In this document: one piece after another, positions 23,970-56,681 of the stretch | How positions within the stretch are numbered: the stretch's first letter is position 1 | Layout: every line of letters starts with the position of its first letter | IMG/VR virus record: IMGVR_UViG_3300026521_000003 | Location: 225,881 to 289,880 of that record | DNA: 64,000 bases | Reading direction: 5' to 3' (one strand) | Translations under genes and position numbers: made by a program | Notes under the pieces: model-generated | Told to the model about the DNA's origin: nothing | Database searches by the model: none | What the model saw: the letters and a program-made list of their open reading frames with translations, nothing else

Positions 23970-24536
23970 ATGAAAATAAATCAAAAAGCAAAACAAAAAG
24001 AGAGAACGAGACTATTAAAATACATTAAAGATGATAATATTGATAGTGTAAAAGAGTTTTTATTGACCTATACTTATGATGACTTCGATAAGTTATTTAG
24101 GTATGCTTGTGAGAATGGTGAGAACGTTATAAAATATTTATTAGGTGAATTTGATGATTTTTATTCATCAGAAATTGATTCTGGATTAGTATTTTTAGTA
24201 CAAAAATTTCCAAAATTATTTTTAGAAATTCACAAAAAGTTCATAAATCAAAAAGGTTATAAAGATGCAGAAATAAGATTTATGAGAATTGCTGCTAGAT
24301 TTGGAAAAGAAGATTTATTCACTTATTTTATTAATGAACGAGGTATTGATCCGGCTCAACCAAAAAATGAATTATTATATAGTTTAATTAGAAAAACAAA
24401 AATATCTGCTTCAGGTAATAATATTCAAAGAATGATAGAAATACTTAAAAATGACCCTAGAGTTATAGAAGAAGCGGCAAAATGTAACCAAACTGATTTA
24501 TTGCCCGATGACATCAAAGATATGTTTGTATTTTAG
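23970..24536 (+). CDS. DIFIF-tagged ankyrin-like protein
   Basis: LFRYACENG..VIKYLL and MRIAARFGKEDLFTYFINERGID; ends TDLLPDDIKDMFVF*. Confidence 0.82.
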   Translation: MKINQKAKQKERTRLLKYIKDDNIDSVKEFLLTYTYDDFDKLFRYACENGENVIKYLLGEFDDFYSSEIDSGLVFLVQKFPKLFLEIHKKFINQKGYKDAEIRFMRIAARFGKEDLFTYFINERGIDPAQPKNELLYSLIRKTKISASGNNIQRMIEILKNDPRVIEEAAKCNQTDLLPDDIKDMFVF

Positions 24537-24545
24537 GGGATTTTT

Positions 24546-25571
24546 ATGAAGATTTATGATGAATTAATTTATGATGATATTAGTATTTATTTAACCTATG
24601 AGCCTTATGAACATATATATCGTCGTGCTAGAAAAAGATTAAAACAATATTTTTCTGAAGAAATGTCAGCTGAATATTTTAATGAATTAATATATGCAGA
24701 TTATATTGAAGTTCAATCAGATAAAAAAATATCTGAAGCTAAACTTAATAATTTTAAATCATTTATGATTGCTTATTTCTTTGATAATAAAAATATGACG
24801 TCTAAAACTTATTATAAATCATTTGAATATATAAAGACTATGGAAGATCCATTAGAACGATTTGATGATCTTTTAACTAGTTCATTTTGTACAGATGAAG
24901 TTTTCTTATATTGTTTAGATAATGAATATATGGGTAATGATGAAGCTACACCTAGAAACATTCCATATAATAACTTTAAAGATAAAACGATAACAGAATT
25001 TTTAAAAGCAATAGATTGGTCGTGGTTTCATAAAGCTCCGCAATACGTAACAGCTTTATTAGATCAAAGAAAATTGACACAAATTCAATATGAATTGATA
25101 TTTAATCAATTTAGTGACTATACAGATATAGTATTTCTTATTGTAGAAAAAGGTGGACGTATTCCCGATGATAAATTTATTGAGTTACTGGGTAAGTATG
25201 ATACATTTGATATTAGTTATGCTAAAGTTGGAAAGGCTATTAAAGCTAAAATTTTAGAAAATTATGATTTTATAAGAAAGTCAGAATACCTTTCAGTTAT
25301 CATGGACTTTTTAACTATGGATGCAAAAGATTTTGAAAGAGCTCAAATTTATGATGCAATATTGCGCTATAAGCTTTCTAATAATTATCTTCATAGTGAA
25401 TTTCAAAGCGACCTTATAAGACGTATAGCTTTTGATACAAATGCTATAGATATTTTAGCAGAGAAAGCAGATTTTTCTAAATATGAACCATCAACACTTA
25501 TGCTAATTTATGAACTAAATAAAAATGAATTTTTCTTACCATCAGAAATTAAAGAAATTTTTATATTTTAA
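24546..25571 (+). CDS. DIFIF-tagged protein
   Basis: Ends IYELNKNEFFLPSEIKEIFIF*. Confidence 0.88.
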   Translation: MKIYDELIYDDISIYLTYEPYEHIYRRARKRLKQYFSEEMSAEYFNELIYADYIEVQSDKKISEAKLNNFKSFMIAYFFDNKNMTSKTYYKSFEYIKTMEDPLERFDDLLTSSFCTDEVFLYCLDNEYMGNDEATPRNIPYNNFKDKTITEFLKAIDWSWFHKAPQYVTALLDQRKLTQIQYELIFNQFSDYTDIVFLIVEKGGRIPDDKFIELLGKYDTFDISYAKVGKAIKAKILENYDFIRKSEYLSVIMDFLTMDAKDFERAQIYDAILRYKLSNNYLHSEFQSDLIRRIAFDTNAIDILAEKADFSKYEPSTLMLIYELNKNEFFLPSEIKEIFIF

Positions 25572-25572
25572 A

Positions 25573-25580
25573 AATAAATA
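25573..25580 (+). promoter_or_regulatory. T4-type late promoter (AATAAATA)
   Basis: AATAAATAAAGGAAAAATAGGATTTTAT-ATG(25601). Confidence 0.55.
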
Positions 25581-25600
25581 AAGGAAAAATAGGATTTTAT

Positions 25601-26386
25601 ATGACTAGTGAAGAACGACAAGAGAAATTTGCTGAAGAAAATTACGCAGGATTAGATGAAACGGGACAAGCCATGCTTGATAAACTAGAAATTATAAAAG
25701 AATATTGGAATATCTACGCTTCAGAAAAAAATAGAGAATCAGAAAAGGCAGAAAAAGCATATCGACAAATGGAAGAGGTTGGTAAAACCTTAGAAAATGA
25801 TTATACCATTTTAAGTATAAAACTGTCAAATGTAGTAGGTCATGCTTTGAATTCAAGTTCAACTAAAATGATACGTAAAGTTATAAAGTTTTTAGATAAA
25901 CATTCTCTTAATGATAAAATGATTCATTATGGGTTAATGAAAATAGCATCCGCAAGAACTAGTGACGGATCACTTATGGAAATGGCGATGACTGTTGCTG
26001 CAAGAAAGGATGATGTTAAATTTGCATCTGAGCTAATGTCTTTCATTGAAAAAAATAAAGGACGAGAAAATATCTGGGAATTTCCAGGAATACCTTGGGA
26101 TTTAAGAAATGCTGGTGATATGGTTAATTTTACTCGAACTATTAGTAAAGAGCGTATTGCATTGGATGCTTTAGTTAGTGGGTCAAAACATATGTATCAA
26201 TTTTTAGTTGGTAGTGAAGGCTTAAATAAAGATACTATTGTTAATTATATAAAACAGCCATATAGTGCGTTTACTATAAAAGAAGCAAGAAATGTTATTG
26301 CTCTTGAACCGTGGACAGTTGAGAAGTTTTTAGAATATGCTCCAGATAGAGTTCCACCTGAAGTTTCAGATATATTTATATTTTAA
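25601..26386 (+). CDS. DIFIF-tagged protein
   Basis: Ends PDRVPPEVSDIFIF*. Confidence 0.88.
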   Translation: MTSEERQEKFAEENYAGLDETGQAMLDKLEIIKEYWNIYASEKNRESEKAEKAYRQMEEVGKTLENDYTILSIKLSNVVGHALNSSSTKMIRKVIKFLDKHSLNDKMIHYGLMKIASARTSDGSLMEMAMTVAARKDDVKFASELMSFIEKNKGRENIWEFPGIPWDLRNAGDMVNFTRTISKERIALDALVSGSKHMYQFLVGSEGLNKDTIVNYIKQPYSAFTIKEARNVIALEPWTVEKFLEYAPDRVPPEVSDIFIF

Positions 26387-26397
26387 GGATTACGGAT

Positions 26398-27198
26398 ATG
26401 AATATTAGACAAGCTATGAAGATTGAAGCCTCAGGACAAAGAGACGTTAAATTAACTAAAGCAGCAGAACTTATAAAAAATGGTGACCGTAATATTATTG
26501 AAAAGTCATTAAATAATTTAAAATTGAATGATTGGATTGGACTAGCATTAAATCCGAATTTGACGGGTGATGACATTGAATTGATGTATAAACTTTTAAA
26601 AGAAGATTATAATTTAGAACGTGAAAAAAATATTCCCAATTCAACAAAAACAAGAAATGCAGGAACTCGAGCTAAAATTCGTAATCTTCTTGCTGTACAC
26701 CCAAATATAAAATCTGAAACGATTGATAAAATCCTTAAAGGTGCAAGATTATCAATTCCAACGGTTTTGAATAATCCAAAAATTACTAGTACTCAAATAG
26801 ATAATTTTTTTAATACACAAGTATTATTACAACCTGAAAAAAATATGGGGTCGTATAGTTTTGTAGGATTAGATAAATTAATGCAAACATCACAGATAAC
26901 GAAATCATTAGTTCAAAAGTGGTTTGATACTTTGAAAGAATATGCCGATTGGACATATTCTGATAACCAATGGTATTCAGTTATTAAAGCATTTTTAGAA
27001 TTTGATGATTGTCCAGAAGAAATTATAAACCTAGCTGCTTCAGCACCACTTAAATCGGATAATTTTTGGTCTAATACACTTAGGAAAATGGCGGTGAATC
27101 ACAAAAATGCATCAAATGATACGATGGTACAAGCTTATAAAATTACTGAAGATGAGCAATTTTTACCAGATGATGTAAAAGATATTTTTGTCTTTTAA
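26398..27198 (+). CDS. DIFIF-tagged LRV/HEAT-like protein
   Basis: LALNPNL, LAVHPNI, VLNNPKI, NHKNASND repeats; ends AYKITEDEQFLPDDVKDIFVF*. Confidence 0.88.
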   Translation: MNIRQAMKIEASGQRDVKLTKAAELIKNGDRNIIEKSLNNLKLNDWIGLALNPNLTGDDIELMYKLLKEDYNLEREKNIPNSTKTRNAGTRAKIRNLLAVHPNIKSETIDKILKGARLSIPTVLNNPKITSTQIDNFFNTQVLLQPEKNMGSYSFVGLDKLMQTSQITKSLVQKWFDTLKEYADWTYSDNQWYSVIKAFLEFDDCPEEIINLAASAPLKSDNFWSNTLRKMAVNHKNASNDTMVQAYKITEDEQFLPDDVKDIFVF

Positions 27199-27232
27199 TT
27201 TAAATTAAAGCTCAAAAAGGTATAATAATAAT

Positions 27233-28192
27233 ATGAAAGTTTTAAAAAAAGATTTAGAAAAAATTGTTAAAAAAGAAACTATTACTATTGAAGATTTAGA
27301 GATATTTCTAAAAGGCAAAAGTAAAGATGCATTTACAAGCTTGGCTTTTAGAAATCAATTACCATTAAACGATGAAATAATAAGAGGATTTATAAAAAAA
27401 TATCCAGATTCTTATGGTCATTTAAGACGTAAACATGGTGATAAGTTTAGTAAAGAAATATTAGAAGAAATACTTCCTACTTTGAATAAAGCTCAAAGAG
27501 GATTATGGGCTAAAGTTAAAAATTTTCCAGAAGAATTTATAGATGATTTAAAAGATGATTGTTCATTTTGGTCATCAAGATTTGTTACTTATACCGATGC
27601 TAAAGAATTGCTCAAAGATTCTAAAAAGTTTAATAATACTTATAGTGGATTAGATAATAATGCTATGGTATGTCGAATTCAAGAATTAGCAAATAATAGA
27701 TTTTTAGATAAAGAAACTTTAGATTTAGTTTTTGAAACTATAATGGAAACAACTACACCCACTATGATTAAATATAAAGATGCTTTGAGTAGATTATTAT
27801 CAAATCCAAATATAGGGATAATTGAAGATAAGATTGTACCCAATTCACATATTATATCCATACATGCTCCTTTTTCAATGCTTAACGCCAATATAAATAA
27901 TGATACTTTTAAAAGTGCAGCAGTAAAAGGAATACTTAAAACTTTTATGTTTAAAGACACATTTATAAAATTTATTGATGCAGGTTATAAGTTACCTCCT
28001 AAAGCAGCTAGAACATTGTATCTTGGGCTTGTGGATAAATCAACACAATCAACGAATAAATCTTTAGAATCATTAATTGAAAAAGTTGTTAAAACTCAAC
28101 CGGTTGATATTAAAATTAAGGAACGTTATTATAATAAAACTGGTGATGAAACATTTTTACCTGAAGAAGTACGCTCTATTTTTATATTTTAA
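27233..28192 (+). CDS. DIFIF-tagged protein
   Basis: Ends YYNKTGDETFLPEEVRSIFIF*; TATAAT at 27221. Confidence 0.88.
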   Translation: MKVLKKDLEKIVKKETITIEDLEIFLKGKSKDAFTSLAFRNQLPLNDEIIRGFIKKYPDSYGHLRRKHGDKFSKEILEEILPTLNKAQRGLWAKVKNFPEEFIDDLKDDCSFWSSRFVTYTDAKELLKDSKKFNNTYSGLDNNAMVCRIQELANNRFLDKETLDLVFETIMETTTPTMIKYKDALSRLLSNPNIGIIEDKIVPNSHIISIHAPFSMLNANINNDTFKSAAVKGILKTFMFKDTFIKFIDAGYKLPPKAARTLYLGLVDKSTQSTNKSLESLIEKVVKTQPVDIKIKERYYNKTGDETFLPEEVRSIFIF

Positions 28193-28838: not shown

Positions 28839-29291
28839 ATGAGTGATATATTTGAGGCGTCCATACCCCCAGACTTTTATAACCTTAGTAGAATTATGAA
28901 ATATCTTATGAGTCAAGATAAAGATACTCTTAATAGGTCATATTTCTACAAGTATAAGGATAGTTTGTTAATAGCACTTAAAGATAATATTCATAAAAGT
29001 GAGATATTAGAATATATAATTTTTTTAATAGAAAATGAGTTATTGACTACATATGATATTAATGAATTATTTGTATCTGCTGTTGGACAAGGGATGACGG
29101 ATATAGTTAAATTATTATTAAAACATGGAGCAGATGTTTCATATAATAATCATATGGCTATACAGATTGTTGCTGAAAATAAAGATGTATTTGATATACT
29201 GATAAGTTATCAGAATGTTGTTGAATTTTTAATTAATAATGGGCATTATGATTTATTGCCTAAAAATGTACAAGAAATATTTGTATTTTAA
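28839..29291 (+). CDS. DIFIF-tagged ankyrin-repeat protein
   Basis: LFVSAVGQGMTDIVKLLLKHGADVS; ends YDLLPKNVQEIFVF*. Confidence 0.85.
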   Translation: MSDIFEASIPPDFYNLSRIMKYLMSQDKDTLNRSYFYKYKDSLLIALKDNIHKSEILEYIIFLIENELLTTYDINELFVSAVGQGMTDIVKLLLKHGADVSYNNHMAIQIVAENKDVFDILISYQNVVEFLINNGHYDLLPKNVQEIFVF

Positions 29292-29302: not shown

Positions 29303-30787
29303 ATGAATATATTATTAGATGATGCTTTTACTAATTGGGGAAAAAGTTTTGAACGTAATCCTAATTGGACAACTAAACAGAATAGATTATTGAAAAAGAA
29401 TGATATAACTTATGACGATTTAATAGAACTTTTTATATATTTTGATAAAGAAGGAAAATTTAAAAATGCGGGTGATATAGGGAAAGTACTATATTATTTT
29501 TATAGAACTAAAGAAATAACCGACAAAGTTGAATTTATAGATCGATCGGCAATATTTGTAGATGCTGAATTTGGAGAGGAATTTTACCTAAAGTTATGGA
29601 ACTCTTTATCGGCTGATAGCAAAAAATATCTATTACCTTTTATTCCTGGTTCATATCAAACACCAGAAATGCTTAAAATCTATTTTAATAAAAATTTTGA
29701 AGCTTCATTTGATAATTATAAAGGTGAGCAACCTTCAGAACAGTTACTTTTAGAATTACTAGACGTAGCATTTATTCAGGTTGTACGTACTATGAAAAAA
29801 GAATGGTGGACTAAAAAATTAAAAGATAAAGCATTATCAAAAGATAAGCTTTCAATTATTTTTATGTCTAAAGAAGTAATTACAAAAAACGAGATTATGG
29901 AATTTTTAGATGATTATTCAAAAACGGATTCACTTTATAATATGTTATTTCGATCGAAGAGTGTATTGGATAAAGAATTTAGAGAGGATCAAGAAATAAG
30001 GGCATTATTTGCATCAAAGTTGAGATATTTGACTGATGTAAGTCAAGATTTTTATAATGAATGTAATTGTGATTTTTATAATTATTATTTAGATATTATC
30101 CGACCATCTTTTAATACAAAAGGGTTGTTAAAATTAATTCCGTCTTCTTGTTTATCGGAGGATGTAAAAGATAAAATTTTGGAAAAACTTCCAGCTGAAT
30201 TATTAATAGAAATGGATAAGTTAAGTGATGCTCAGTTATTATTCCTTTATGATAAAGCAAAAGAAATGAGATCGGTAGGACGTAGTAGAATTGTTAGAAT
30301 GCTCTATGAATTATTTAAACGTAAGTTGTTTAAAGTTGAAATGTTAAAAGACTTTGCAGGAGTTACGTTTGAAGATTTAGAGTATTCTATGGATTCTAAA
30401 TCTCTTAAAGAATTTATGACATCAGAAGTTATTGATTATTTTTTTCAAGTAGAAGATAAAGATTTATTTAAGAATCAAAAAAATATGAAATATGCTGGAA
30501 CTTTAGATAAAGAAAAATTTTTCATTCTTATGAAAAATCTGCCATATAATAATTTAAAGGCTAGGCTTAATTTTAGAGTAACAGAAGATGATTTCGCTTA
30601 TTTTTATTTCAAAACTAAACATTTAGAAGATAAAAAATTAGCAGATAAAATTTTTGTATTGTTACTACGATTAGAACAGGACAACTATATACAAATCTCA
30701 GAAGAATTTAAGAAATTATTAAATTCATTGCCTGATGAAGTAACATATGACAACTATAAAGATGTTCAAGATATTTTTATTTTTTAG
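29303..30787 (+). CDS. DIFIF-tagged protein (494 aa)
   Basis: Ends YDNYKDVQDIFIF*. Confidence 0.9.
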   Translation: MNILLDDAFTNWGKSFERNPNWTTKQNRLLKKNDITYDDLIELFIYFDKEGKFKNAGDIGKVLYYFYRTKEITDKVEFIDRSAIFVDAEFGEEFYLKLWNSLSADSKKYLLPFIPGSYQTPEMLKIYFNKNFEASFDNYKGEQPSEQLLLELLDVAFIQVVRTMKKEWWTKKLKDKALSKDKLSIIFMSKEVITKNEIMEFLDDYSKTDSLYNMLFRSKSVLDKEFREDQEIRALFASKLRYLTDVSQDFYNECNCDFYNYYLDIIRPSFNTKGLLKLIPSSCLSEDVKDKILEKLPAELLIEMDKLSDAQLLFLYDKAKEMRSVGRSRIVRMLYELFKRKLFKVEMLKDFAGVTFEDLEYSMDSKSLKEFMTSEVIDYFFQVEDKDLFKNQKNMKYAGTLDKEKFFILMKNLPYNNLKARLNFRVTEDDFAYFYFKTKHLEDKKLADKIFVLLLRLEQDNYIQISEEFKKLLNSLPDEVTYDNYKDVQDIFIF

Positions 30788-30796
30788 GAGAATTTT

Positions 30797-31429
30797 ATGA
30801 GTATATCAAAAGAGGAAGTTATAGCTGATGTTTTTTCAAGTTATAATAATATCGTATCAAAAATACCTTCATTTGAATTTTTAGATGAGACTGTTGAAAG
30901 TAACCACATGTCAGGGTGGGCTGTGTACTATATCCCATCAACTATTATTAGATTTTATATTTATGTTGAATTTTATGAAGAAGAAACATTAACTATGAAT
31001 ATTGAAATAAGTATAGAAATAGATCCGGATTTTTCTGAAGACCAAAAATATAGAAAATATAGAAAAAGTTCATTTATAAGTACAATCGAAGATATTGATG
31101 TTGCAGAATATATTGGTAGTGATGGTGTATTTGATACCTCTTTAGCAATGGAAACGTATAAAAAAATTGAGACTTCAGTTGAAAAGCAAATAGATGATGT
31201 ACAAGTAATGTTACAATCAATTTTTAAAGATATTGAAGAAGAATTAATTGATGGTGAGGATATTAAAAAGACTCATAAATGGATAGCGGAGGATTGGATT
31301 GAAGTTGATAAGATGATTAAATTATCTAGATTGACAGTTGGAGATATTTTACATACTCTTGAATACTTTGATTTACTTTCAGATTCTAGATTCGTGCCAC
31401 CTGAAGTTAAAGATATATTTTTATTCTAG
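30797..31429 (+). CDS. DIFIF-tagged acidic protein
   Basis: Ends SRFVPPEVKDIFLF*. Confidence 0.85.
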   Translation: MSISKEEVIADVFSSYNNIVSKIPSFEFLDETVESNHMSGWAVYYIPSTIIRFYIYVEFYEEETLTMNIEISIEIDPDFSEDQKYRKYRKSSFISTIEDIDVAEYIGSDGVFDTSLAMETYKKIETSVEKQIDDVQVMLQSIFKDIEEELIDGEDIKKTHKWIAEDWIEVDKMIKLSRLTVGDILHTLEYFDLLSDSRFVPPEVKDIFLF

Positions 31430-31438
31430 GAGATACTT

Positions 31439-31882
31439 ATGGTAGAAATTGGATTACATGGCAATTATTGGAAAAATTTAAAAGAATATTATGAAACAGA
31501 GTATGATGGTTTAGCACCAGGAAAGTATGCAACACAGTATGCTCAAGAAATGGAAAGGGGTGAAGCTGATGTATTAAGTACTGATGACTACTACACACCA
31601 GAAGCTATTGAATATTGGATTGAAGATACAATGGATAAAATAGCCGATGATGAAAATCCAGATATTGAATACAATAATGAAACTATTAATGATTTTCCAA
31701 ATATAGAAGAGTATCAAGGGTATGAAGATCAAATTGCAGCATATTTTTTATTAAGAGATTTAGATGATTTTGTACAAGAATTAAAAAAGAATAATAAAGA
31801 CTACGTGGAAGAAGCAATTAGATTAAACTGGATTGATATGTTAGAACAAGTTCCAGAAATAAGCGACCTTTTTATTTTTTAA
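31439..31882 (+). CDS. DIFIF-tagged highly acidic protein
   Basis: Ends LEQVPEISDLFIF*. Confidence 0.85.
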   Translation: MVEIGLHGNYWKNLKEYYETEYDGLAPGKYATQYAQEMERGEADVLSTDDYYTPEAIEYWIEDTMDKIADDENPDIEYNNETINDFPNIEEYQGYEDQIAAYFLLRDLDDFVQELKKNNKDYVEEAIRLNWIDMLEQVPEISDLFIF

Positions 31883-32920: not shown

Positions 32921-33925
32921 ATGAGTTATACTGATGATTTTTTAAATAGTGTTATAGAAAAGAGAGATTTGCATTCTGTTGAAATGGGTTGGTTTGCAGA
33001 GGTTATGAATGGTGAATATAGTAATGAATCATATCAAGATGCTTTAGATTTTTTAGATGGAAAATTAGATTTACAAGATGTTGAATTTGTATCTGCAATT
33101 TTAACTGAAGTTTTTCCATCTCAAGGCTGGAACTCAAATTGGAGTGCAGATGAAGTACTTTTTAAATTGTTTGATTTTGGTTATGATGATGAGGAAATCT
33201 ATAAAAATGCAAAATTATTAATGCAATATAATGATACGATTGGTCTTCCAGATGATTGGGATGAAAAATTAGAAAAAGCTACGTATTTGGATGATTTTGA
33301 ACATAATTATAAAAAAATAAAGCCTTCGGAAGATGCACGATTACTATCAAATGATAAAGTAGAAGAAATTATAAAGAATATAGAATATGATCCAATGGAT
33401 ACAGATCAAGTTGAGGTATTAGCAAATTTAGTTTATTATATGTTTAATGATGAGCGAACTGGATTGGGTACTGTAGCTAAATATGATGCTACCGAGTTAT
33501 GGAATCAACTAGCCCTTAATGCTGAATTAGATAATGATGTACTTGATGCTATTGAATCAGGAGCAATAGGATGGTATGCTGAAAATGTCGAAGAACAATT
33601 AGATAAGGTAGATATGTATTATAATGTTATGGATCAAAAAAGAGCTATGGCTCAATTCAAAGCTAATAATCGTTTAACTGAAGAAGATGTTGAACGTTGG
33701 AGAAATGAATATAAAGGTGTGCTTGAATTTAGTTTTAGTAAAGGTTTTGTAGGCTTAGAAGATCAAAGAAATGATTCAATTATAATTACATTTAATGGTG
33801 AAGAAATTTATAAAGATGAAGGTTCTGGAAATTCATTTGGTGATACCAGTCTATTAAAAACACCAATAGAAGAATTATTAAAGAAAAATGATTATAAAAC
33901 AGCTGCAAATGTATTTGTTTTTTAG
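32921..33925 (+). CDS. Acidic protein with short DIFIF-type tag
   Basis: Ends DYKTAANVFVF*. Confidence 0.88.
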   Translation: MSYTDDFLNSVIEKRDLHSVEMGWFAEVMNGEYSNESYQDALDFLDGKLDLQDVEFVSAILTEVFPSQGWNSNWSADEVLFKLFDFGYDDEEIYKNAKLLMQYNDTIGLPDDWDEKLEKATYLDDFEHNYKKIKPSEDARLLSNDKVEEIIKNIEYDPMDTDQVEVLANLVYYMFNDERTGLGTVAKYDATELWNQLALNAELDNDVLDAIESGAIGWYAENVEEQLDKVDMYYNVMDQKRAMAQFKANNRLTEEDVERWRNEYKGVLEFSFSKGFVGLEDQRNDSIIITFNGEEIYKDEGSGNSFGDTSLLKTPIEELLKKNDYKTAANVFVF

Positions 33926-33936
33926 GAGAAAATAAT

Positions 33937-34479
33937 ATGATTGACAATCACAAAAAATTTATAGAAGTATTTAATGACCATATAAGTAGAGATAAAAACT
34001 CTATGATTTCTCATGAAAATGCAATAAGTACAGATTATAAAGTCACGGATATAAACTTAATAAATGTAAGTTCATCAGCAGAAGCTTCTCTTGAAACCTT
34101 TTGGGCTACATTTTTACTTGACTTGCAAATGGTAGATGAATATGGTGTGATCGTAAAGTCGATTGATACTAAATATTATTTACGTACTAGGAGTTCCGAT
34201 ATTGAGTTTATCCATTCTAGTATGGATGAACCATACAGTTATGTTTGGAATCTCCCAAAGGAAGTTGAAAAGTCACTAGTTATTGCTATACTAGCTGATA
34301 TGATTGATATGGATGAGTTATGTCTAATGTTTTTAACCCCAGAAATAATTGAATTTATGATTGAAAAAAAATATATACTATTTGATATGTTTAGTGATGA
34401 AGCAAAAATTAAATATTATGAGAAATTTAATGATGTTATATTTCTACCTAAAAATGTCCAAGACATTTTTATTTTTTAA
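33937..34479 (+). CDS. DIFIF-tagged protein
   Basis: Ends VIFLPKNVQDIFIF*. Confidence 0.85.
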   Translation: MIDNHKKFIEVFNDHISRDKNSMISHENAISTDYKVTDINLINVSSSAEASLETFWATFLLDLQMVDEYGVIVKSIDTKYYLRTRSSDIEFIHSSMDEPYSYVWNLPKEVEKSLVIAILADMIDMDELCLMFLTPEIIEFMIEKKYILFDMFSDEAKIKYYEKFNDVIFLPKNVQDIFIF

Positions 34480-36173: not shown

Positions 36174-36182
36174 GGAATAATT

Positions 36183-36800: not shown

Positions 36801-36810
36801 AGGTTATAAA

Positions 36811-37383: not shown

Positions 37384-37393
37384 AGGACAATAA

Positions 37394-38182: not shown

Positions 38183-38194
38183 TAGGAGATTAAT

Positions 38195-38500
38195 TTGAAA
38201 ACTTATACGGGCAATGCTATTATTAAAGAAATTCATGAAATTAATAAAGATTTACCTCAAAATGAACTATATGGTTTTTTGGAAGTAATAAATGGTAATA
38301 GTTTTCATTTTGTTATTTCAAAAGAAAAAGTTAAAAGTGATATAGTATCTGGTTCTATTGTATCATTTAAAGGGGAATTAAATATTGTTGATAAACAGTT
38401 ATGGGATACAATTAGATTTTTTGATAAACAACCACCAACAGTTATTCTATTGACTGAAATGACTCATCTTCCAGAAGTAGAAAATATATTTATTTTTTAG
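38195..38500 (+). CDS. Small DIFIF-tagged protein (possible OB-like beta domain)
   Basis: TTG start after AGGAG; ends THLPEVENIFIF*. Confidence 0.8.
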   Translation: MKTYTGNAIIKEIHEINKDLPQNELYGFLEVINGNSFHFVISKEKVKSDIVSGSIVSFKGELNIVDKQLWDTIRFFDKQPPTVILLTEMTHLPEVENIFIF

Positions 38501-41979: not shown

Positions 41980-41991
41980 GAGAATTAGAAA

Positions 41992-42825: not shown

Positions 42826-42833
42826 GATATAAA

Positions 42834-45234: not shown

Positions 45235-46566
45235 ATGCGATTAAGTCAATTAATAAAAAAAATAGATGAATTAAATTTAGAATATCAATTATTGGATGAT
45301 CCCAATTTAATTATTAATGTTTGGACACCATATAATGATCGAGGCATAAAACTAGAAGACGGAAAATATTATTCAAATGATACTTTAACTTCAGATGATA
45401 TAACTTCAATCCGAGGTAAATATTTAGAATTAGCACAACTTGCATTTGATAATGATTTAAAAATTAAAAATATTAACTACATAGAATTTAATTTGATAGC
45501 TAATATGCAGATAGAATTAGGTCGTTATTTAACAACTGACTCTATTAAGAATAATGATATTGAGTTGGAACCGACTGAAGCTCATGGATTAGATATTAAA
45601 GTTGCAGATTTATCATATGATGGATTACATCCTCAGAAAATTTTTAATACTAAATTAAGAAAACATGAAAAAGAAAAAGTTTTAAATAATATTTTAGATT
45701 TATTGAGTTATCATAATGATTATGGTAGAGCGATAATTTTATTAAATTTGGTTGAATATAGTAGTTTCATTGAACCCCTTAAAGTTGCTTTAGATGAACA
45801 GTATATAGATATTTCTTTTATGATAGAAGAAACACATAAAAGAGATGTTGTTTATTATGAAGATTTCAAAAAGCTATTTGCTACTTTGTCAACTTATAAA
45901 TCAACATACCCCATAGACCTATCTTATAACAGAGGTTATCTTTCAGATTCTGCTGTTGAAAGTCCTAAAACAATGAAGCAAATTTGTGAGAATTGGGAAT
46001 TTACTAATGAAACTGCTCATAGAGTTTTAACTTTTTTAATTCAAAACGAACAAACAAAAGCACTAGGTATTTTTTTAAAAAATTATCAACCGTTTGAAAT
46101 AACGGATTATTTAGATATTATTGAACAGGGGTTATTAACTATTGTTGAAAGTAGAATTTTTAAATTATTCCTAGATGATTGGGTTGATCTTAGTAAATTT
46201 AAGGTCGAAATTTTAAATGACTTAGATACGTTTACTATAAGATTGTATGATGAGCCTATAAAATTATTAGTAGAGGGTTTACTTAATATAGGTGTTGAGC
46301 CAAACTATTTATTCAAAAAATTATTAGATAGTTATGCCAATTCAAATTTATATAATCCTTTTGCATCTGGAAAAAAAGCTATGAAACTTTTTATAAATTT
46401 AGATGTGGATTTTACTCATAGAGATGGATATGTTTTGAATTTTTTTATTGATAATCAAAAATTGATTGATAAGATTATTAAAGATCCAAAAGTAGTAGAA
46501 GTGTTAGTAGCTAGTAATAATTTTACGTTTTTACCAGAAGAAATTAAATCTATATTTGTGTTTTGA
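45235..46566 (+). CDS. DIFIF-tagged protein (443 aa)
   Basis: Starts MRLSQLIKKIDE; ends FTFLPEEIKSIFVF*. Confidence 0.88.
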   Translation: MRLSQLIKKIDELNLEYQLLDDPNLIINVWTPYNDRGIKLEDGKYYSNDTLTSDDITSIRGKYLELAQLAFDNDLKIKNINYIEFNLIANMQIELGRYLTTDSIKNNDIELEPTEAHGLDIKVADLSYDGLHPQKIFNTKLRKHEKEKVLNNILDLLSYHNDYGRAIILLNLVEYSSFIEPLKVALDEQYIDISFMIEETHKRDVVYYEDFKKLFATLSTYKSTYPIDLSYNRGYLSDSAVESPKTMKQICENWEFTNETAHRVLTFLIQNEQTKALGIFLKNYQPFEITDYLDIIEQGLLTIVESRIFKLFLDDWVDLSKFKVEILNDLDTFTIRLYDEPIKLLVEGLLNIGVEPNYLFKKLLDSYANSNLYNPFASGKKAMKLFINLDVDFTHRDGYVLNFFIDNQKLIDKIIKDPKVVEVLVASNNFTFLPEEIKSIFVF

Positions 46567-47156
46567 TGATGGATTATAAAACTTTTAAACATATAATCAT
46601 AACTGCTGGGGATGCTAAAAGAGCCGACTTATCTTTTATGTTGGACAGAACTATTTTTAATAGTAAACTTAATAAACAATTATCACTTGACCCTAATTTA
46701 ACCGATGATAATATTATTTCTATTATGGTATTAGCTAATAGTTACTTGGTTTATAATTTATTCGATAATATTATGAAAAATACTATAATGGGGTATGAAG
46801 TACTTGAATTTTGGATCAAACATAGAAATGAATTAAATGGTGATCATATACGTTTAAGTTTTTATAAAGGTATTCTAAGATACCATAAGAAATTAATTAC
46901 AAAAGAATTTGTTGAGTTGGCATTTCAAGTTTATTCAATTTCATTAAAAGTTGATATTTTAACTAATCCCATTGCATGTGGTTTTTTAGATGAAGAAACA
47001 ATTGCTTTTGAACTGCAATTTAATAGAGACGACCCTTATTTTGTTAAAGGTGTTCGAGGCTTTGAACATTTAAATGATGCTTACTTGAAAGTTTATAATG
47101 ATTATGATAATACCATATATTTAGCAGATGAAGTTAAAGCTTTATTTGTTTTTTAG
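46563..47156 (+). CDS. DIFIF-tagged protein
   Basis: Ends VYNDYDNTIYLADEVKALFVF*. Confidence 0.85.
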   Translation: MMMDYKTFKHIIITAGDAKRADLSFMLDRTIFNSKLNKQLSLDPNLTDDNIISIMVLANSYLVYNLFDNIMKNTIMGYEVLEFWIKHRNELNGDHIRLSFYKGILRYHKKLITKEFVELAFQVYSISLKVDILTNPIACGFLDEETIAFELQFNRDDPYFVKGVRGFEHLNDAYLKVYNDYDNTIYLADEVKALFVF

Positions 47157-47164: not shown

Positions 47165-47920
47165 ATGAGTTTAGTTAATGGCGTTATAACAAATGATTTA
47201 GAAGAAGTTAAAAAATCATTAAAACGTAATAAAAAAAGCTTAAAAGTTATTAGTAAAAGACACCAAAAAACACCATTAGAGTTAGCTGTTGTAAATGATA
47301 ATGTAGAAATAGTAAAATATATGCTTGATTTTTCAAAAGAAAAAAAGTTTGATTATTATATGAAAAGTAATTATGCAAAATCAACACTTAAGCCCTTAAT
47401 GGATTTAACAAAAAGTGTTGAAATGTCTAATTTATTAATAGAATATGGTTTTGAATTAGAAGATGAATTTTCATCATATTTAGATGCTAAAGCATCTAAT
47501 CCTTTACTAGAAAATAGATTTGAACTATTTAAGTGGGGTGTCGATCATGGAGCTGATGTAAATAAAATAATTAATGATTGGCCTCCACTATATGCTACAA
47601 TACTATCCCATAATATACCCAATCAAGAAAAAGATCAGTATATTGAATTATTAGTAAATAATGGTGCCGATATTTATTATGAGTGGAAAGAAACTAATAT
47701 ATTTTTATTACTTTTAAGATATTCATGGGATAAAGAATTAGTTAAAACGATACTTAAATATTTTGATACATTAGATTATAGAACTATTGAAATGTTATAT
47801 AGAACTGATAAAGAATTATTAAGAGGGTATAAAAATATCTCTAAGATTGTAGATATTTTAGTGGATAACAATATGATGGATGTTCTGCCACAAGATGTGA
47901 CAGAAATTTTTGTTTTTTAA
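47165..47920 (+). CDS. DIFIF-tagged ankyrin-repeat protein
   Basis: KTPLELAVVNDNVEIVKYML, GVDHGADVN, WPPLYATI, LVNNGADI; ends MDVLPQDVTEIFVF*. Confidence 0.88.
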   Translation: MSLVNGVITNDLEEVKKSLKRNKKSLKVISKRHQKTPLELAVVNDNVEIVKYMLDFSKEKKFDYYMKSNYAKSTLKPLMDLTKSVEMSNLLIEYGFELEDEFSSYLDAKASNPLLENRFELFKWGVDHGADVNKIINDWPPLYATILSHNIPNQEKDQYIELLVNNGADIYYEWKETNIFLLLLRYSWDKELVKTILKYFDTLDYRTIEMLYRTDKELLRGYKNISKIVDILVDNNMMDVLPQDVTEIFVF

Positions 47921-52117: not shown

Positions 52118-52137
52118 AAAGAAAAAGGATTAAAACT

Positions 52138-55180: not shown

Positions 55181-55208
55181 ATAAGATAAATTAATTAGGA
55201 GACAATTC

Positions 55209-55769
55209 ATGACATCATTTAAAGATTATTATCATGATCCTTTTAGTATCCCTAGTACGGAAGATAAAAAATTTATTATTGGTCCTATAAAGCCAATGTA
55301 TGCATTACTAATAGATTCAATGGGATATAATAATATTGATGTTGATGAACTGTATGACCCTACTAATTTTAAAAAAGAGTACGAACAAGCTAAAAAAAAT
55401 CTTGAAGTGTATATGAAAGATTTGCTTATTAAATCTCAATTAATGGGTTTTTCAAAAAATGCACTTACAATAATTGTTGCCCAAAATAATGATTCTGTGT
55501 ATGTATTGAAAGGTGAGTTTGTATTACGGGTGATAAATGACTTTAAACTGAATAAAATTAAATTAGCTGATAAAACTTTTAAAGAATTTAAAGACTTTGT
55601 AGAAAATAATACAGATTACTGGTCTAATTCATTAATTGAAATAGATAAAATAACTATTAATATTGGAAATTCGCTTGAGGATTATCTGTTTTTAATGGAT
55701 CGATATGAGATTTATGATGAAACATTTAAGGAACGTTTAAAAACTGCACAGGATATTTTTATATTTTAG
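55209..55769 (+). CDS. DIFIF-tagged protein
   Basis: Ends ERLKTAQDIFIF*. Confidence 0.85.
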   Translation: MTSFKDYYHDPFSIPSTEDKKFIIGPIKPMYALLIDSMGYNNIDVDELYDPTNFKKEYEQAKKNLEVYMKDLLIKSQLMGFSKNALTIIVAQNNDSVYVLKGEFVLRVINDFKLNKIKLADKTFKEFKDFVENNTDYWSNSLIEIDKITINIGNSLEDYLFLMDRYEIYDETFKERLKTAQDIFIF

Positions 55770-55777
55770 GAGATAAA

Positions 55778-55987
55778 ATGAATGAATTGAAAGAGATTAT
55801 ACGAGTTCAAAAAGAGATAGAACGATTGGATGAAACCCGAAAAAAGCTTATTGATTATGCTATAAAAAATAAAGAGAAAGAGCTTATGAAACTATCACAA
55901 AAGAATAAACAATTAGAAGAAGAGAATAGACGACTTAAATCTGATATAGCAAATCTAAATCAAAAAATTAAAAATTTAACACACTAA
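55778..55987 (+). CDS. Small coiled-coil protein
   Basis: 69 aa; AGGAG SD; heptad pattern. Confidence 0.75.
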   Translation: MNELKEIIRVQKEIERLDETRKKLIDYAIKNKEKELMKLSQKNKQLEEENRRLKSDIANLNQKIKNLTH

Positions 55988-56003
55988 TAAATGAGAGGGA
56001 ATT

Positions 56004-56681
56004 ATGAGCGGCTGGTTTGATTCTTATAATAATAAAATTGATAGAACAATCGATAATGACAATATTTCATATACTAGTACTTCATTTGAAACTAAAGGAG
56101 AATATACTACTAGTACCACTATTAAAATGCCCACCGTAGAAGTGTTTTTAAAAGCATTAGATGCTTCTAATAAAAAGCTTACAATTCCTCTTAAACAAAT
56201 TATTGATGACTTAACAACACAAGAATTAAATTCTGTTATAGGGCTTTCATCATACAATGCTACAACTCCATTGGGTCATGCAATCAATGCTATGAATGTA
56301 GAAGCTGTTGAGTATTTATTATCATTGTGTGTTGACACTAACTTACATGGACCTAACCAAAAACATATATTGCAAGAATTATTAAATTCAAATGCAACAG
56401 AAAAAAGAATAAGAATTTTAGAAAAGGTTCTTAAAGAGTTTTCTGGCTTTATACCATTAGAACCAAATTATGATGGTCGTTTTTATAGTACGAAGTATTT
56501 AATTGTATTAATCAATAATCGTGCAGTTATGAGAGATACCATTTTTAATATTTATGATAGTTTTCCTCCAAAGCAACGGAAGGAATTAGTTAAGAATTGT
56601 AAAGCGATGCAAGAAATAGCTATAGAGAAAAAAGATTTTGAAATTCTTCCAGATGAAGTAAAGAATATTTTTCTTTTTTAG
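56004..56681 (+). CDS. DIFIF-tagged ankyrin-like protein
   Basis: TTPLGHAINAMNVEAVEYLLSLCVDTN; ends FEILPDEVKNIFLF*. Confidence 0.85.
   Translation: MSGWFDSYNNKIDRTIDNDNISYTSTSFETKGEYTTSTTIKMPTVEVFLKALDASNKKLTIPLKQIIDDLTTQELNSVIGLSSYNATTPLGHAINAMNVEAVEYLLSLCVDTNLHGPNQKHILQELLNSNATEKRIRILEKVLKEFSGFIPLEPNYDGRFYSTKYLIVLINNRAVMRDTIFNIYDSFPPKQRKELVKNCKAMQEIAIEKKDFEILPDEVKNIFLF

What the first reader, a model, noticed from the sequence alone, without database searches (positions are those of the whole stretch)
23970..56681. At least eight ankyrin-like proteins, all carrying the DIFIF tag
Seen: ankyrin-type TPLH/TALM...GAD(V/I)N segments in ORFs 23970, 28839, 34528, 38509, 43749, 44465, 47165 and 56004, each ending in the tag. 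Established: ankyrin repeats are protein-binding scaffolds, uncommon in phages. Poxviruses pair ankyrin repeats with a constant C-terminal F-box/PRANC module to deliver substrates to a ligase. Inference: 'variable binder + constant C-terminal dock' here may be a prokaryotic analogue, capturing diverse host (defence) proteins and bringing them to one effector.
Basis: partly seen in the sequence, partly recalled or inferred. Interest (0 to 1): 0.7.

Follow-up and report, generated by a model that had tools for sequence, protein, structure and literature searches.

The report
Forty-three phage proteins share one tail
A giant T4-like phage from a hydrothermal vent encodes 43 otherwise unrelated, fast-evolving soluble proteins (about eight are ankyrin-repeat proteins) that all end in the same 12-residue peptide, most likely an address label that takes this varied set of binder proteins to one common docking site whose identity is still unknown.

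Summary
All eight ORFs exist and end in a variant of the tail. Four are ankyrin by Pfam's cut-offs, two are sub-threshold, and two are ankyrin-like only by language-model or structure look-alikes. A confident AlphaFold model of ORF 38509 matches only ankyrin/DARPin structures.

They are 8 of 43 ORFs in a 289,880-bp uncultured vent phage that end in [FY]-L-P-x-[ED]-[VI]-K-[DNES]-Φ-F-Φ-F-stop. Chance predicts 0.24.

- The bodies share no detectable similarity.
- The tag codons vary synonymously, so selection acts on the peptide.
- The proteins have no predicted membrane segment.
- The tail is modelled as a loose end.
- A relative with a 73% identical clamp carries its own tail variant (…LPEKIKNLFF) on at least 17 genes.
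- Tagged orthologues are 25-38% identical, against a median of 50%.

The phage has T4-type late promoters (upstream of most sub-arrays), a T4-type head module, a PCNA-like clamp, and its own ClpS-ClpA and ClpP-like genes.

Best reading: a C-terminal docking or targeting peptide on a diversifying binder family (about 0.8). The receptor is unresolved.

The parts
23970..24536 (+). Tagged ORF, 188 aa, weak ankyrin signal; tail LLPDDIKDMFVF
   Evidence: Pfam Ank_2 E 0.007 and Ank_3 E 0.009, both below cut-off. An 83%-identical orthologue, P0029, lies on another contig.
28839..29291 (+). Tagged ankyrin-repeat ORF, 150 aa; tail LLPKNVQEIFVF; late-promoter core 29 nt upstream
   Evidence: Pfam Ank_2 36.9 bits and Ank 24.8 bits, above cut-offs. 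TATAAATA at 28810.
34528..35508 (+). Tagged ORF, 326 aa, N-terminal ankyrin-like repeats (TPLH at residue 39); tail FLPKEIKDIFVF
   Evidence: Pfam Ank_2 E 5e-4, 20.9 bits, below cut-off. phmmer against ORF 43749 gives E 3e-4.
38509..38997 (+). Tagged ankyrin-repeat ORF, 162 aa; tail FIPKELRDIFIF; the one that was modelled
   Evidence: Pfam Ank_4 29.9 bits. AF2 pLDDT 87.8, with confidence falling in the tail (mean 77 for residues 151-160, 48 for 161-162). The Foldseek top 50 are almost all ankyrin-repeat proteins or DARPins. Homologues at 37-85% identity keep the tail.
43749..44450 (+). Tagged ankyrin-repeat ORF, 233 aa (231 if started at the ATG); tail FLPDDVKDMFLF
   Evidence: Pfam Ank_2 44.8 bits and Ank_5 32.2 bits. 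The 84%-identical homologue P0002 ends FLPDDIKDIFIF.
44465..45220 (+). Tagged ORF, 251 aa, ankyrin-like only by language-model features; tail LLPKEIRSMFIF
   Evidence: No Pfam hit. Atlas features score 0.94 with ankyrin clusters among the best hits. This is the weakest of the eight.
47165..47920 (+). Tagged ankyrin-repeat ORF, 251 aa (GADVN at residue 129); tail VLPQDVTEIFVF; last gene of its sub-array
   Evidence: Pfam Ank_2 28.6, Ank_4 25.9, Ank_3 25.1 and Ank 24.5 bits.
56004..56681 (+). Tagged ORF, 225 aa, ankyrin-like by features and by Atlas model; tail ILPDEVKNIFLF
   Evidence: No Pfam hit. Atlas features 0.97; structure TM 0.42-0.56 to ankyrin clusters. The orthologue P0015 ends ILPDEIKDIFVF.
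10888..11205 (+). First tagged ORF of the window, 105 aa, with a small N-terminal Cys-rich domain; tail FLFDEIKDIFIF
   Evidence: PHROG hits to families of unknown function cover residues 7-41.
14002..22713 (+). Ten back-to-back tagged ORFs (14002, 14833, 16383, 16867, 17763, 18293, 19119, 19806, 20524, 21205), 157-513 aa, no known domains
   Evidence: Tails. No body similarity. No Pfam family. Late-promoter core at 13957.
23292..23960 (+). Tagged ORF, 222 aa; tail YLPQILQDVFIF
24546..28192 (+). Four tagged ORFs (24546, 25601, 26398, 27233), 261-341 aa
   Evidence: AATAAATA at 25573. ORFs 25601 and 26398 have G007 orthologues at 32% and 38% identity.
29303..31882 (+). Three tagged ORFs (29303, 30797, 31439), 147-494 aa
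   Evidence: G007 orthologues at 25-30% identity have variant tails.
32921..34479 (+). Two tagged ORFs (32921 with a degenerate tail ...AANVFVF; 33937)
35523..38500 (+). Five tagged ORFs (35523, 36183, 36811, 37394, 38195), 101-262 aa
39010..39639 (+). Tagged ORF, 209 aa; tail HAPDDIKDIFIF; last before the IS insertion
41254..43742 (+). Three tagged ORFs (41254, 41992, 42834) opening the sub-array that ends at 47920
   Evidence: TATAAATAAAAG at 41221. The same genes are found on an ENA contig.
45235..47156 (+). Two tagged ORFs (45235, 443 aa; 46563, 197 aa)
55209..55769 (+). Tagged ORF, 186 aa, tail ...KTAQDIFIF (only the last six residues fit)
   Evidence: 12.9 bits.
56678..57685 (-). The only tagged ORF on the minus strand, 335 aa; tail KLLPEVREIFIF; its own late-type promoter
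   Evidence: AATAAATAAAAG at 57712 (minus strand). Orthologues in L008 and G007.
13957..13964 (+). T4-type late-promoter core TATAAATA, 45 nt before tagged ORF 14002. Similar cores lie at 25573, 28810, 32150 and 41221 (+) and at 57705-57712 (-)
   Evidence: Genome-wide, 87 of 269 cores lie within 75 nt upstream of a gene start, against 11.3 expected. They include the major head protein and prohead-module genes.

Best explanation
The eight ORFs are real but divergent ankyrin-repeat proteins. They are a minority (about 8 of 43) of a much larger family of soluble, rapidly diverging proteins. The family belongs to an uncultured T4-like jumbo phage (289,880 bp, 27% G+C, from a hydrothermal-vent metagenome). 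The only shared feature is a C-terminal peptide, [FY]-L-P-x-[ED]-[VI]-K-[DNES]-[ILVM]-F-[ILV]-F-COOH. In about half of the members it is preceded by Y-x-x-T-x-D.

The peptide is a short linear docking or targeting signal. It hangs off the folded body as a loose end and is read by one receptor that differs between phage lineages, which suggests a phage-encoded receptor. I give this general statement about 0.8.

My preferred specific mechanism, and the confidence given below, is capsid targeting. In this view the tail is the C-terminal counterpart of phage T4's N-terminal capsid-targeting sequence. It binds the prohead scaffolding core, so that a diversified set of binder proteins is made late, packed into the head and injected with the DNA to neutralise host defences at the start of the next infection.

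Shown: the family, the motif, peptide-level selection, solubility (no predicted membrane segment), fast body evolution, lineage-specific tail variants, the ankyrin fold, and the T4-type head and late-promoter context.

Inferred: that the tail docks at all, late expression (from promoter motifs only), packaging, injection, and an anti-defence role.
For: Family and motif:
- 43 ORFs end in the tail against 0.24 expected.
- The tail profile matches all 43, always at the exact C-terminus, and matches no other ORF convincingly.

Peptide-level selection: Ile codons ATT 16 / ATA 15, Pro codons CCA 18 / CCT 10 / CCC 2, stops TAA 26 / TAG 15 / TGA 2.

Bodies:
- Best pairwise BLASTP E-value after removing the tail is 0.002.
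- Pfam finds only ankyrin families, in 6 of 42 members.
- No transmembrane-length hydrophobic segment.

Tail conformation: in the AF2 model of ORF 38509, confidence falls along the tail, to a mean pLDDT of 48 for the last two residues, and no secondary structure is assigned after residue 157.

Distribution:
- A profile of the tail found 31 proteins at E <= 1e-3 among 1.84 billion. 29 of them matched at the extreme C-terminus, and about two dozen are not encoded in this genome.
- On their short contigs, tagged genes again lie in tandem.

Lineage-specific variant: relative G007 has a clamp 73% identical to this phage's. At least 17 of its genes, most in two arrays, end in ...LPEK[IL]KN[LI](F/L)F. 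These include orthologues of G000 tagged genes.

Fast evolution: tagged orthologues are 25-38% identical. The median is 50%, the major head protein 83% and the prohead protease 79%.

Late class:
- The T4 late-promoter core [AT]ATAAATA is 8-fold enriched upstream of gene starts. It precedes the major head protein, the ORF in scaffold position and a gp2-like gene.
- It also precedes tagged ORFs 14002, 25601, 28839, 41254 and 56678(-), and ORF 32186, which opens another sub-array.

T4-type head: portal, S77/gp21-type prohead protease (PF03420 E 1e-35; phrog_207 1e-66) and major head protein (phrog_138 8e-75). No family shares an N-terminal CTS-like peptide.

Metatranscriptome contigs at 99% identity or more lie on tagged genes. 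The run is an RNA library, but DNA carry-over is not excluded.
Against: - No virion proteome exists, so packaging is pure inference.
- T4's signal is N-terminal and is cut off at an L/I-x-E site by gp21. This tail is C-terminal, and I found no conserved cleavage motif next to it.
- Late timing rests on promoter motifs alone. -10-like elements (AGGTATAAT, GGTTATAAT, TGATATAAT) also occur inside the array.
- Forty-three cargo species, many acidic and up to 513 aa, is far more than any known set of internal proteins.
- The last seven residues resemble the clamp-binding tails of T4-family polymerases: RB69 ...LFDMFDF, T4 ...LDFLFG.
- The phage encodes its own ClpS-ClpA and ClpP-like genes.
- Between orthologues, the tail is not more identical than the body. 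Only its pattern is kept.
Confidence: 0.37

Rival explanations
1. Sliding-clamp tether. The tail is a clamp-binding motif of the T4/PIP type. It docks the tagged proteins on the phage's own PCNA-like sliding clamp, and so on replicating and late-transcribing phage DNA.
For: - The phage has T4-type machinery: a gp44-like clamp loader, a gp55-like late sigma and T4-type late promoters.
- Just downstream of the sigma gene lies a 243-aa protein missed by Pfam and PHROGs. It folds with pLDDT 92 into a clamp: Foldseek against PCNAs gives E about 1e-11 and TM 0.6-0.69.
- Known clamp-binding tails, read here from the records: T4 gp43 ...SLDFLFG, gp55 ...SLDFLYEAND, gp33 ...TLDFLL, RB69 gp43 ...SLFDMFDF.
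- Tag A (V-K-D-I-F-I-F) shares D(-5), F(-3), F(-1) and hydrophobic residues at -7 and -4 with the RB69 tail.
- The last piece of the phage's own DNA polymerase ends ...NIAMDSLF, with the same Φ-x-x-Φ-F spacing.
- A phage-encoded receptor would explain the lineage-specific tail variants.
Against: - Forty-three proteins competing with the polymerase and late-transcription factors for three pockets per clamp would seem harmful.
- T4 tails tolerate extra C-terminal residues, whereas this tail is strictly terminal.
- Conserved L(-11) and P(-10) have no counterpart in the T4 or RB69 tails.
- The gp55-like protein's presumed clamp epitope (DIDxDFESI) is unchanged between G000 and G007 although the tag differs.
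- There is no evident reason why fast-evolving binders should ride on a clamp.
Confidence: 0.2
2. Protease tether or degron. Either the tail docks the tagged proteins on an AAA+ protease, so that ankyrin and other binder bodies hand captured host proteins over for destruction, in the way the C-terminal XB peptide of SspB tethers it to ClpX. Or the tail marks the proteins themselves for timed removal, like an ssrA tag. The protease would be the phage's own ClpS-ClpA-ClpP or a host one.
For: - The genome encodes ClpS (PF02617 E 6e-27) directly upstream of a 767-aa ClpA-type double AAA+ protein, which carries a VGF loop of the kind that docks on ClpP. It also encodes a 275-aa ClpP-like peptidase with Ser and His in place.
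- It also encodes a DnaJ and a MoxR-like AAA+ protein next to a metallopeptidase-like gene.
- Strict C-terminal position and a hydrophobic end are typical of C-terminal degrons and tethering peptides (general knowledge).
- Fast-evolving binders fit an arms race over host targets.
- ClpP, ClpS and ClpA genes are known from some jumbo phages and are thought to act on host proteins (PMC7824862).
Against: - The tail resembles no known Clp signal.
- I know of no adaptor that binds ClpA by a C-terminal peptide.
- Five other viral contigs that encode ClpA-like proteins gave no tail match, and the two I read in full show no enrichment of any C-terminal tail.
- Late-type promoters argue against 'clear away early proteins'.
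- Co-occurrence could not be tested, because the relatives' contigs end just before the ClpS-ClpA locus.
Confidence: 0.15
3. Host-directed signal. The tail is read by a host machine, for example a chaperone, the host beta clamp, or a secretion system that exports proteins by C-terminal signals, as type IV systems do for many ankyrin effectors. The host machine rather than a phage protein sets where the tagged proteins go.
For: - Ankyrin proteins with C-terminal export signals are the hallmark of Dot/Icm-type effectors (general knowledge).
- The samples include an 'epibiont metagenome', so the host may live on an animal.
- Tail variants between G000 and G007 could track different hosts.
- The motif has Q or K at -6 and ends Φ-F, loosely like bacterial clamp-binding motifs (general knowledge; a lead only).
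Against: - The host is unknown. The attempt to find it through the IS element failed.
- Known type IV signals are fuzzy, not a sharply conserved 12-mer.
- There is no signal peptide or membrane segment.
- Nothing in the data points to a particular host machine.
Confidence: 0.1
4. Not a docking signal. The tail is either the last conserved remnant of one hugely diverged paralogous family (a C-terminal cap needed for folding or self-association), or it reflects a constraint at DNA or RNA level at gene ends (recombination site, coupling of translation, slippery T-runs).
For: - Several members show a longer shared stretch (H-x-N-x-[SP]-x-D ... Y-x-x-T-x-D) that looks like a helical repeat unit. 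Many bodies may therefore be one ancient repeat family.
- Genes are packed 8-14 nt apart with a ribosome-binding site right after the stop.
Against: - Synonymous codon variation at every position, and three different stop codons, rule out a nucleotide-level element.
- T-runs are broken in the many Val/Leu variants.
- The tail is also present on isolated genes: genome 24475; 56678 on the opposite strand; and 47165, which is followed by a convergent gene.
- It sits on ankyrin and non-ankyrin bodies alike and is modelled as unpacked.
- All paralogues in one genome share that genome's variant, which a folding cap on different folds would not require.
Confidence: 0.07

Closest known systems
Internal proteins of T-even phages with the capsid-targeting sequence (IPI, IPII, IPIII, Alt; Repoila et al. 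1994; Rao & Black 2010, PMC3012670)
   Same: Both are sets of otherwise unrelated, fast-diverging phage proteins encoded side by side, whose only common element is a short terminal peptide. Both occur in phages with a gp21-type prohead protease and a T4-type head module. The T4 proteins are injected anti-defence proteins.
   Different: The T4 signal is N-terminal, about 10 residues long, and removed at an L/I-x-E site. Here the peptide is C-terminal, 12-22 residues long, has no conserved cleavage site and shows no sequence likeness. T4 has a handful of such proteins; this phage has 43. Packaging is unproven here.
Clamp-binding C-terminal tails of T4-family proteins (gp43, gp33, gp55; RB69 gp43 peptide) and PIP boxes of PCNA partners
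   Same: Both are short hydrophobic/acidic peptides at or near the C-terminus that let several different proteins share one ring-shaped hub. The spacing Φ-x-x-Φ-F is shared, as are three identical positions with RB69 ...LFDMFDF. The phage has a PCNA-like clamp.
   Different: T4 has three or four clients of known replication or transcription function. Here there are 43 clients of unknown function, with conserved L-P upstream and two extra residues. Binding is untested.
Poxvirus ankyrin/PRANC (F-box-like) proteins
   Same: Both are viral multigene families that join variable ankyrin binders to a constant C-terminal element.
   Different: PRANC is a folded F-box-like domain that recruits the host SCF ubiquitin ligase. 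Here the constant element is a 12-residue peptide with no PRANC or F-box match. Bacteria have no ubiquitin ligase, and most family members are not ankyrin proteins.
C-terminal tethering peptides and degrons of AAA+ proteases (SspB XB peptide, ssrA tag)
   Same: Both are strictly C-terminal short peptides on a flexible end that tie an adaptor or a substrate to one protease. The phage has its own ClpS-ClpA-ClpP set.
   Different: There is no sequence likeness to either signal. Those signals sit on one adaptor, or are added by tmRNA, and are not encoded on dozens of genes.
Phage and symbiont ankyrin proteins (e.g. sponge-symbiont 'ankyphage' ANKp, Wolbachia WO phage; from my own knowledge)
   Same: Both are ankyrin repeats encoded by phages, thought to bind host or eukaryotic proteins.
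   Different: Those carry signal peptides or lie in eukaryote-association modules. None is known to share a C-terminal tag with dozens of non-ankyrin proteins.

Membership tests
Ankyrin-repeat proteins (Pfam clan Ank) | Sequence match to ankyrin repeat models at or above Pfam's gathering score | tested here: met
   Met for 28839, 38509, 43749 and 47165. Sub-threshold for 34528 and 23970. Not met for 44465 and 56004. Six of the 42 tagged ORFs in the window match at E <= 0.01.
Ankyrin-repeat proteins (Pfam clan Ank) | Fold: stacked helix-turn-helix pairs of about 33 residues | tested here: met
   The AF2 model of ORF 38509 (pLDDT 87.8) has paired helices, and its 50 best listed PDB matches are almost all ankyrin-repeat proteins or DARPins. 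The Atlas model of 56004 matches ankyrin clusters at TM 0.42-0.56. The other six were not modelled.
Poxvirus Ank/PRANC family | C-terminal PRANC / F-box-like domain | tested here: not met
   No PRANC or F-box family appears in any Pfam scan. The constant part is only 12-22 residues long.
T-even internal proteins (CTS cargo) | Phage has a T4-type prohead core (gp21-type protease, portal, gp23-type head protein) | tested here: met
   PF03420 E 1e-35, phrog_207 1e-66, phrog_213 6.5e-80, phrog_138 8e-75.
T-even internal proteins (CTS cargo) | N-terminal targeting peptide of about 10 residues ending in an L/I-x-E cleavage site | tested here: not met
   The shared peptide is C-terminal. No family shares an N-terminal peptide. 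There is no conserved L/I-x-E at a fixed distance from the tail.
T-even internal proteins (CTS cargo) | Presence in the virion and injection with the DNA | not testable with these tools
   The phage is uncultured and no proteome exists.
Clamp-binding (T4 tail / PIP-like) clients | Hydrophobic C-terminal motif with Φ-x-x-Φ-aromatic spacing, in a genome with a matching clamp | tested here: met
   The tag core is V-K-D-I-F. The pol tail is M-D-S-L-F. T4 and RB69 tails were read from their records. The clamp was identified by fold.
Clamp-binding (T4 tail / PIP-like) clients | Physical binding to the clamp's hydrophobic pocket | not testable with these tools
   It needs a binding assay or a solved complex. 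The one co-folding attempt is recorded under Tried and rejected.
AAA+ protease tags / adaptors | A cognate protease or unfoldase is present | tested here: met
   ClpS, a ClpA-type ATPase and a ClpP-like peptidase are present in the same genome.
AAA+ protease tags / adaptors | Tail-dependent binding to, or degradation by, that protease | not testable with these tools
   It needs biochemistry. Co-occurrence in relatives could not be judged because their contigs end before the locus.

The most novel reading that the evidence does not exclude
The phage runs its own targeted-proteolysis system. A library of about 40 rapidly diversifying binder proteins (ankyrin and other helical scaffolds) each captures a different host protein. 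Through the common C-terminal tail, each docks on the phage-encoded ClpS-ClpA-ClpP machine, which destroys the captured host defence proteins. This would be a bacterial-virus counterpart of poxvirus Ank/PRANC-SCF, built from prokaryotic parts.
Probability: 0.12. Interest if true: 0.9.

Novelty: new variant of a known kind. Interest (0 to 1): 0.72.

Why it matters
If the tail is an address label, this phage clade offers an unusually clean natural system. It has one short peptide and dozens of different cargo or adaptor proteins. It has a receptor that co-varies between lineages. It also has a second, different tail (…YPELWV) on another 20 small proteins next door.

Finding the receptor would show how a giant phage organises a large arsenal of probable anti-host proteins, whether by packing them into the head, parking them on its DNA, or feeding targets to its own protease.

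It would also give a portable 12-residue tag for loading or tethering foreign proteins.

Finally, it would flag about 40 proteins of unknown function (ankyrin and others) as candidate binders of host proteins, perhaps defence proteins, in vent bacteria (probably Campylobacterota), a group for which little phage biology is known.

Tried and rejected
- **Co-folding.** I folded the clamp trimer with the polymerase tail and the tag tail. Score 0.02 against a mark of 0.32; verdict 'no answer'. This is no evidence either way.
- **DNA-level repeat or cassette boundary.** Rejected because of synonymous codon variation and varied stop codons.
- **Slippage on T-runs or translational coupling.** Rejected. 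The runs are broken in many members, and isolated or opposite-strand genes carry the tail.
- **Membrane anchor or secretion by signal peptide.** No transmembrane-length hydrophobic segment was found.
- **Clamp search by sequence.** PF02916, PF09116 and phrog_223 found nothing, as did BLASTP against T4 gp45 and phmmer against PDB. The clamp was found only by position and fold.
- **Host identification through the IS605-type transposase.** No relative was found in genome contigs.
- **Strict DNA pattern in IMG/VR.** It found only a fragment of a near-identical phage (the clamp is 98% identical) and one chance hit.
- **Link between phage ClpA genes and C-terminal tags.** Five other ClpA-encoding viral contigs had no tail match, and the two read in full show no enrichment of any tail.
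- **PDZ domains as receptors.** None in this genome or its relatives.
- **Apparent likeness of the ClpP-like protein's C-terminal extension (…LYGITTITKLPKIK) to the upstream half of the tag.** The tail profile does not support it.
- **PHROG scans of small tagged and tag-B proteins for a gp33-like co-activator.** Nothing was found.
- **Literature searches for the motif strings and for similar families.** Nothing relevant was found.
- **Tail more conserved than body between orthologues?** No. Mean identity is 48% for the tail and 56% for the body over 16 pairs. The tail's pattern is kept, not its letters.

Full report
**What the window is.** The window is the last 64 kb of a single 289,880-bp contig with 27% G+C. 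The contig is JGI record Ga0256828_1000001. The run that may be its source is labelled a hydrothermal-vent metagenome, and near-identical sequence occurs in vent, epibiont and biofilm samples.

It is a phage. It has a portal, an S77/gp21-type prohead protease and a gp23-type major head protein. It also has tail proteins, terminase pieces and Hef-like homing endonucleases like those of Campylobacter phages.

Its replication and late-transcription apparatus is T4-like:
- a gp44-like clamp loader;
- a family-B DNA polymerase;
- a gp55-like late sigma;
- a promoter motif with the T4 late core TATAAATA. This core is 8-fold enriched just upstream of gene starts and precedes the head genes.

The host is unknown. 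A Campylobacterota host is my inference from the composition, the promoters, the flagellin/FlaG genes and the sample types.

**The observation.** The eight ORFs are there and each ends in a variant of the tail.
- Four pass Pfam's ankyrin cut-offs: 28839, 38509, 43749 and 47165.
- Two are sub-threshold: 34528 and 23970.
- Two have no Pfam match. ORF 56004 looks like ankyrin clusters both by language-model features (0.97) and by its ESM Atlas model (TM 0.42-0.56). ORF 44465 does so only by features (0.94).

I modelled ORF 38509 with six homologues. The model has pLDDT 87.8 and consists of stacked helix pairs. Its 50 best listed PDB matches are almost all ankyrin-repeat proteins or DARPins. So 'ankyrin-like' is right for most of the eight, with 44465 the least certain.

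**The larger picture.** The eight are a minority. Genome-wide, 43 ORFs end in [ILVMF]-F-[ILVE]-[FY]-stop, against 0.24 expected from composition. Forty-two lie in the window between 10888 and 57685, one of them on the minus strand. One lies at genome 24475-25428, just upstream of a DNA-polymerase piece.

A profile of the last 32 residues matches all 43, always at the exact C-terminus. The consensus is [FY]-L-P-x-[ED]-[VI]-K-[DNES]-[ILVM]-F-[ILV]-F. F(-3) is invariant, and about half of the members have Y-x-x-T-x-D further upstream.

With the tail removed, the bodies show no similarity to each other; the best BLASTP E-value is 0.002. Pfam recognises nothing in them except ankyrin repeats. None has a transmembrane-length hydrophobic segment.

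Codons within the tail vary freely at synonymous sites and the stop codon varies. What is conserved is therefore a peptide, not a DNA or RNA element. Two unrelated large phage contigs treated the same way show no such C-terminal enrichment.

**Relatives.** Searching 1.84 billion representative proteins with the tail profile gave 31 hits at E <= 1e-3. Of these, 29 matched at the very C-terminus, and about two dozen are not encoded in this genome. Their short contigs again show two or three tagged genes in tandem.

A more distant relative is G007 (306 kb; clamp 73% identical). At least 17 of its genes, most in two arrays, end in a different but clearly related tail...LPEK[IL]KN-L-F-F, NLLF, NLIFF, KIIFF, NILFL. 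These include orthologues of tagged genes of this genome.

So each phage lineage has its own tail variant, and its paralogues share it. That is what one expects if all tails must fit one receptor that itself differs between lineages.

The tagged proteins are among the fastest-evolving genes. Orthologues are 25-38% identical, against a median of 50%, 83% for the head protein and 79% for the prohead protease. Between orthologues the tail keeps its pattern rather than its letters. In the model of ORF 38509 confidence falls along the tail, to a mean pLDDT of 48 for the last two residues, and the end is not packed against the body.

**What it most likely is.** The data support a short linear docking or targeting peptide on a diversifying family of soluble binder-type proteins (about 0.8). 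The receptor is not identified. I considered three concrete candidates.

[quoted passage not shown] This is the only known case of unrelated phage proteins united by a short terminal peptide.
- This phage has the same type of head module.
- It has no family with a shared N-terminal peptide.
- It places T4-type late-promoter cores in front of most sub-arrays: 14002, 25601, 28839, 32186, 41254 and 56678(-).
- Fast evolution fits injected anti-defence proteins.
- Against: the peptide is at the other end of the protein, there is no cleavage site, there are 43 species of cargo, and there are no proteomic data.

*(b) Sliding clamp.* I found the phage's clamp by position and fold. It is a 243-aa ORF at genome 143739-144470, with pLDDT 92 and PCNA matches at E about 1e-11.
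- The tail's last seven residues resemble verified clamp-binding tails: RB69 gp43 ...LFDMFDF; T4 gp43 ...LDFLFG, gp55 ...LDFLY, gp33 ...LDFLL.
- They also resemble the phage's own polymerase tail ...MDSLF.
- Against: crowding of the clamp, strict terminal position, and the extra conserved L-P.

*(c) Clp protease.* The genome encodes ClpS directly upstream of a ClpA-type ATPase with a VGF loop, and a ClpP-like peptidase.
- Against: no likeness to known Clp signals, no such tags in other ClpA-encoding phage contigs, and late-type promoters.

I rank (a) 0.37, (b) 0.20 and (c) 0.15. A host receptor gets 0.10 and 'not a dock' 0.07.

**Comparison with the known, and novelty.** The proteins are members of the ankyrin superfamily where tested. 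They are not members of the poxvirus Ank/PRANC family, because no PRANC/F-box domain is present. The tail family works like a targeting-peptide system, but it fails the defining features of the T4 CTS (position and cleavage site), so it is not a member of that either.

I found no description of this motif or family in the literature. I therefore call it a new variant of a known kind: a shared terminal address on diversified phage proteins. Its scale (43 genes, about 13% of the roughly 325 genes) is unusual, and a second tail family lies next to it.

**Limits.**
- Timing rests on promoter motifs alone.
- The metatranscriptome evidence shows presence in an RNA library, not proven transcription.
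- Only one of the eight proteins was modelled.
- The genome is estimated to be 87% complete.
- The relatives' contigs end before the Clp locus, so co-occurrence could not be judged.

Noticed in passing
window 2785-13933 and 60200-60670; genome 179031-239813: A second family of about 21 small ORFs (77-293 aa) ends in a different C-terminal tail, [YF]-P-E-[LRY]-[WFL]-[VI]-stop, for example ...YPELWV and ...HPEWLI. Most lie in an array just upstream of the tag-A array, behind TGTATAAT-type promoters. G007 and contig L008 carry the same tail (YPENFI, NPEWLI, NPELLI).
   Followed up: partly
genome 159506-162132 (outside the window); genome 18285-19112: The phage encodes a clpS-clpA operon: ClpS (PF02617 E 6e-27) and a 767-aa double AAA+ protein with a VGF loop. 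It also encodes a 275-aa ClpP-like peptidase with an 80-residue C-terminal extension. A MoxR-like 1055-aa AAA+ protein and a DUF2201 metallopeptidase-like gene lie just upstream.
   Followed up: partly
genome 143739-144470 (outside the window): A 243-aa protein invisible to Pfam, PHROGs and PDB sequence search is a PCNA-type sliding clamp by predicted fold (pLDDT 92; Foldseek E about 1e-11). It is 57-98% identical in 54 metagenomic homologues, on contigs of up to 496 kb, and lies next to the gp55-like late sigma gene.
   Followed up: yes
genome 4449-5252, 13077-13694, 25479-26633, 142544-143050: The family-B DNA polymerase appears to be split into at least four separately encoded pieces. The last piece begins with an intein-C-like ...NNILVHNS motif, which suggests a split intein or trans-splicing.
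   Followed up: no
window 39911-41101 (-), with ends at about 39797-39911 and 41101-41254: An IS200/IS605-type element with a TnpB-like gene (OrfB_IS605, Cas12f1-like_TNB) is inserted in the middle of the tag-A array. Its flanks hold hairpin-forming repeats (CCCAA.GGCTAAAGAC.ATTGGG). The same insertion is present on an independent ENA contig.
   Followed up: partly
whole genome; in the window at 1761, 13957, 25573, 28810, 32150, 41221, 52110, 53489, 60644, 61353 (+) and 10858, 57712 (-): The T4-type late-promoter core [AT]ATAAATA, often followed by AAAG and an A-rich leader to the ribosome-binding site, lies 16-68 nt upstream of 87 genes, against 11 expected. A second class, TGTATAAT, precedes replication-type genes.
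   Followed up: yes
window 49958-54290 and genome 196327-197640: The large terminase subunit seems to be in pieces: a 261-aa ORF at window 53505 and a 437-aa ORF at genome 196327 whose acidic tail ends ...DEYDILPSVF. A 711-aa Hef-like homing endonuclease lies nearby at window 49958-52093.
   Followed up: no
genome 27158-29800 (outside the window): The phage carries a full-length DnaJ, a flagellin (Flagellin_N/C), a FlaG-like gene and, nearby, a CheY-like response regulator and a CCA-adding/poly(A) polymerase-type enzyme.
   Followed up: no
window 28206-28814: A 202-aa ORF without the tail, but with a hydrophobic C-terminal stretch (...SIIGLGVILRMLAI...), sits inside the tag-A array. ORFs 22724, 32186 and 32560 are further untagged genes within the array.
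   Followed up: no
window 26398-27198, 37394-38182; G007 140737-141591, 157270-158088: Several non-ankyrin tagged proteins share a longer C-terminal stretch, H-x-N-[AC]-[SP]-x-D-[IL]-+-x-x-x-Y-x-x-T-x-D. It looks like a unit of a helical (HEAT/LRV-like) repeat, so many 'orphan' bodies may also be solenoid binders.
   Followed up: no
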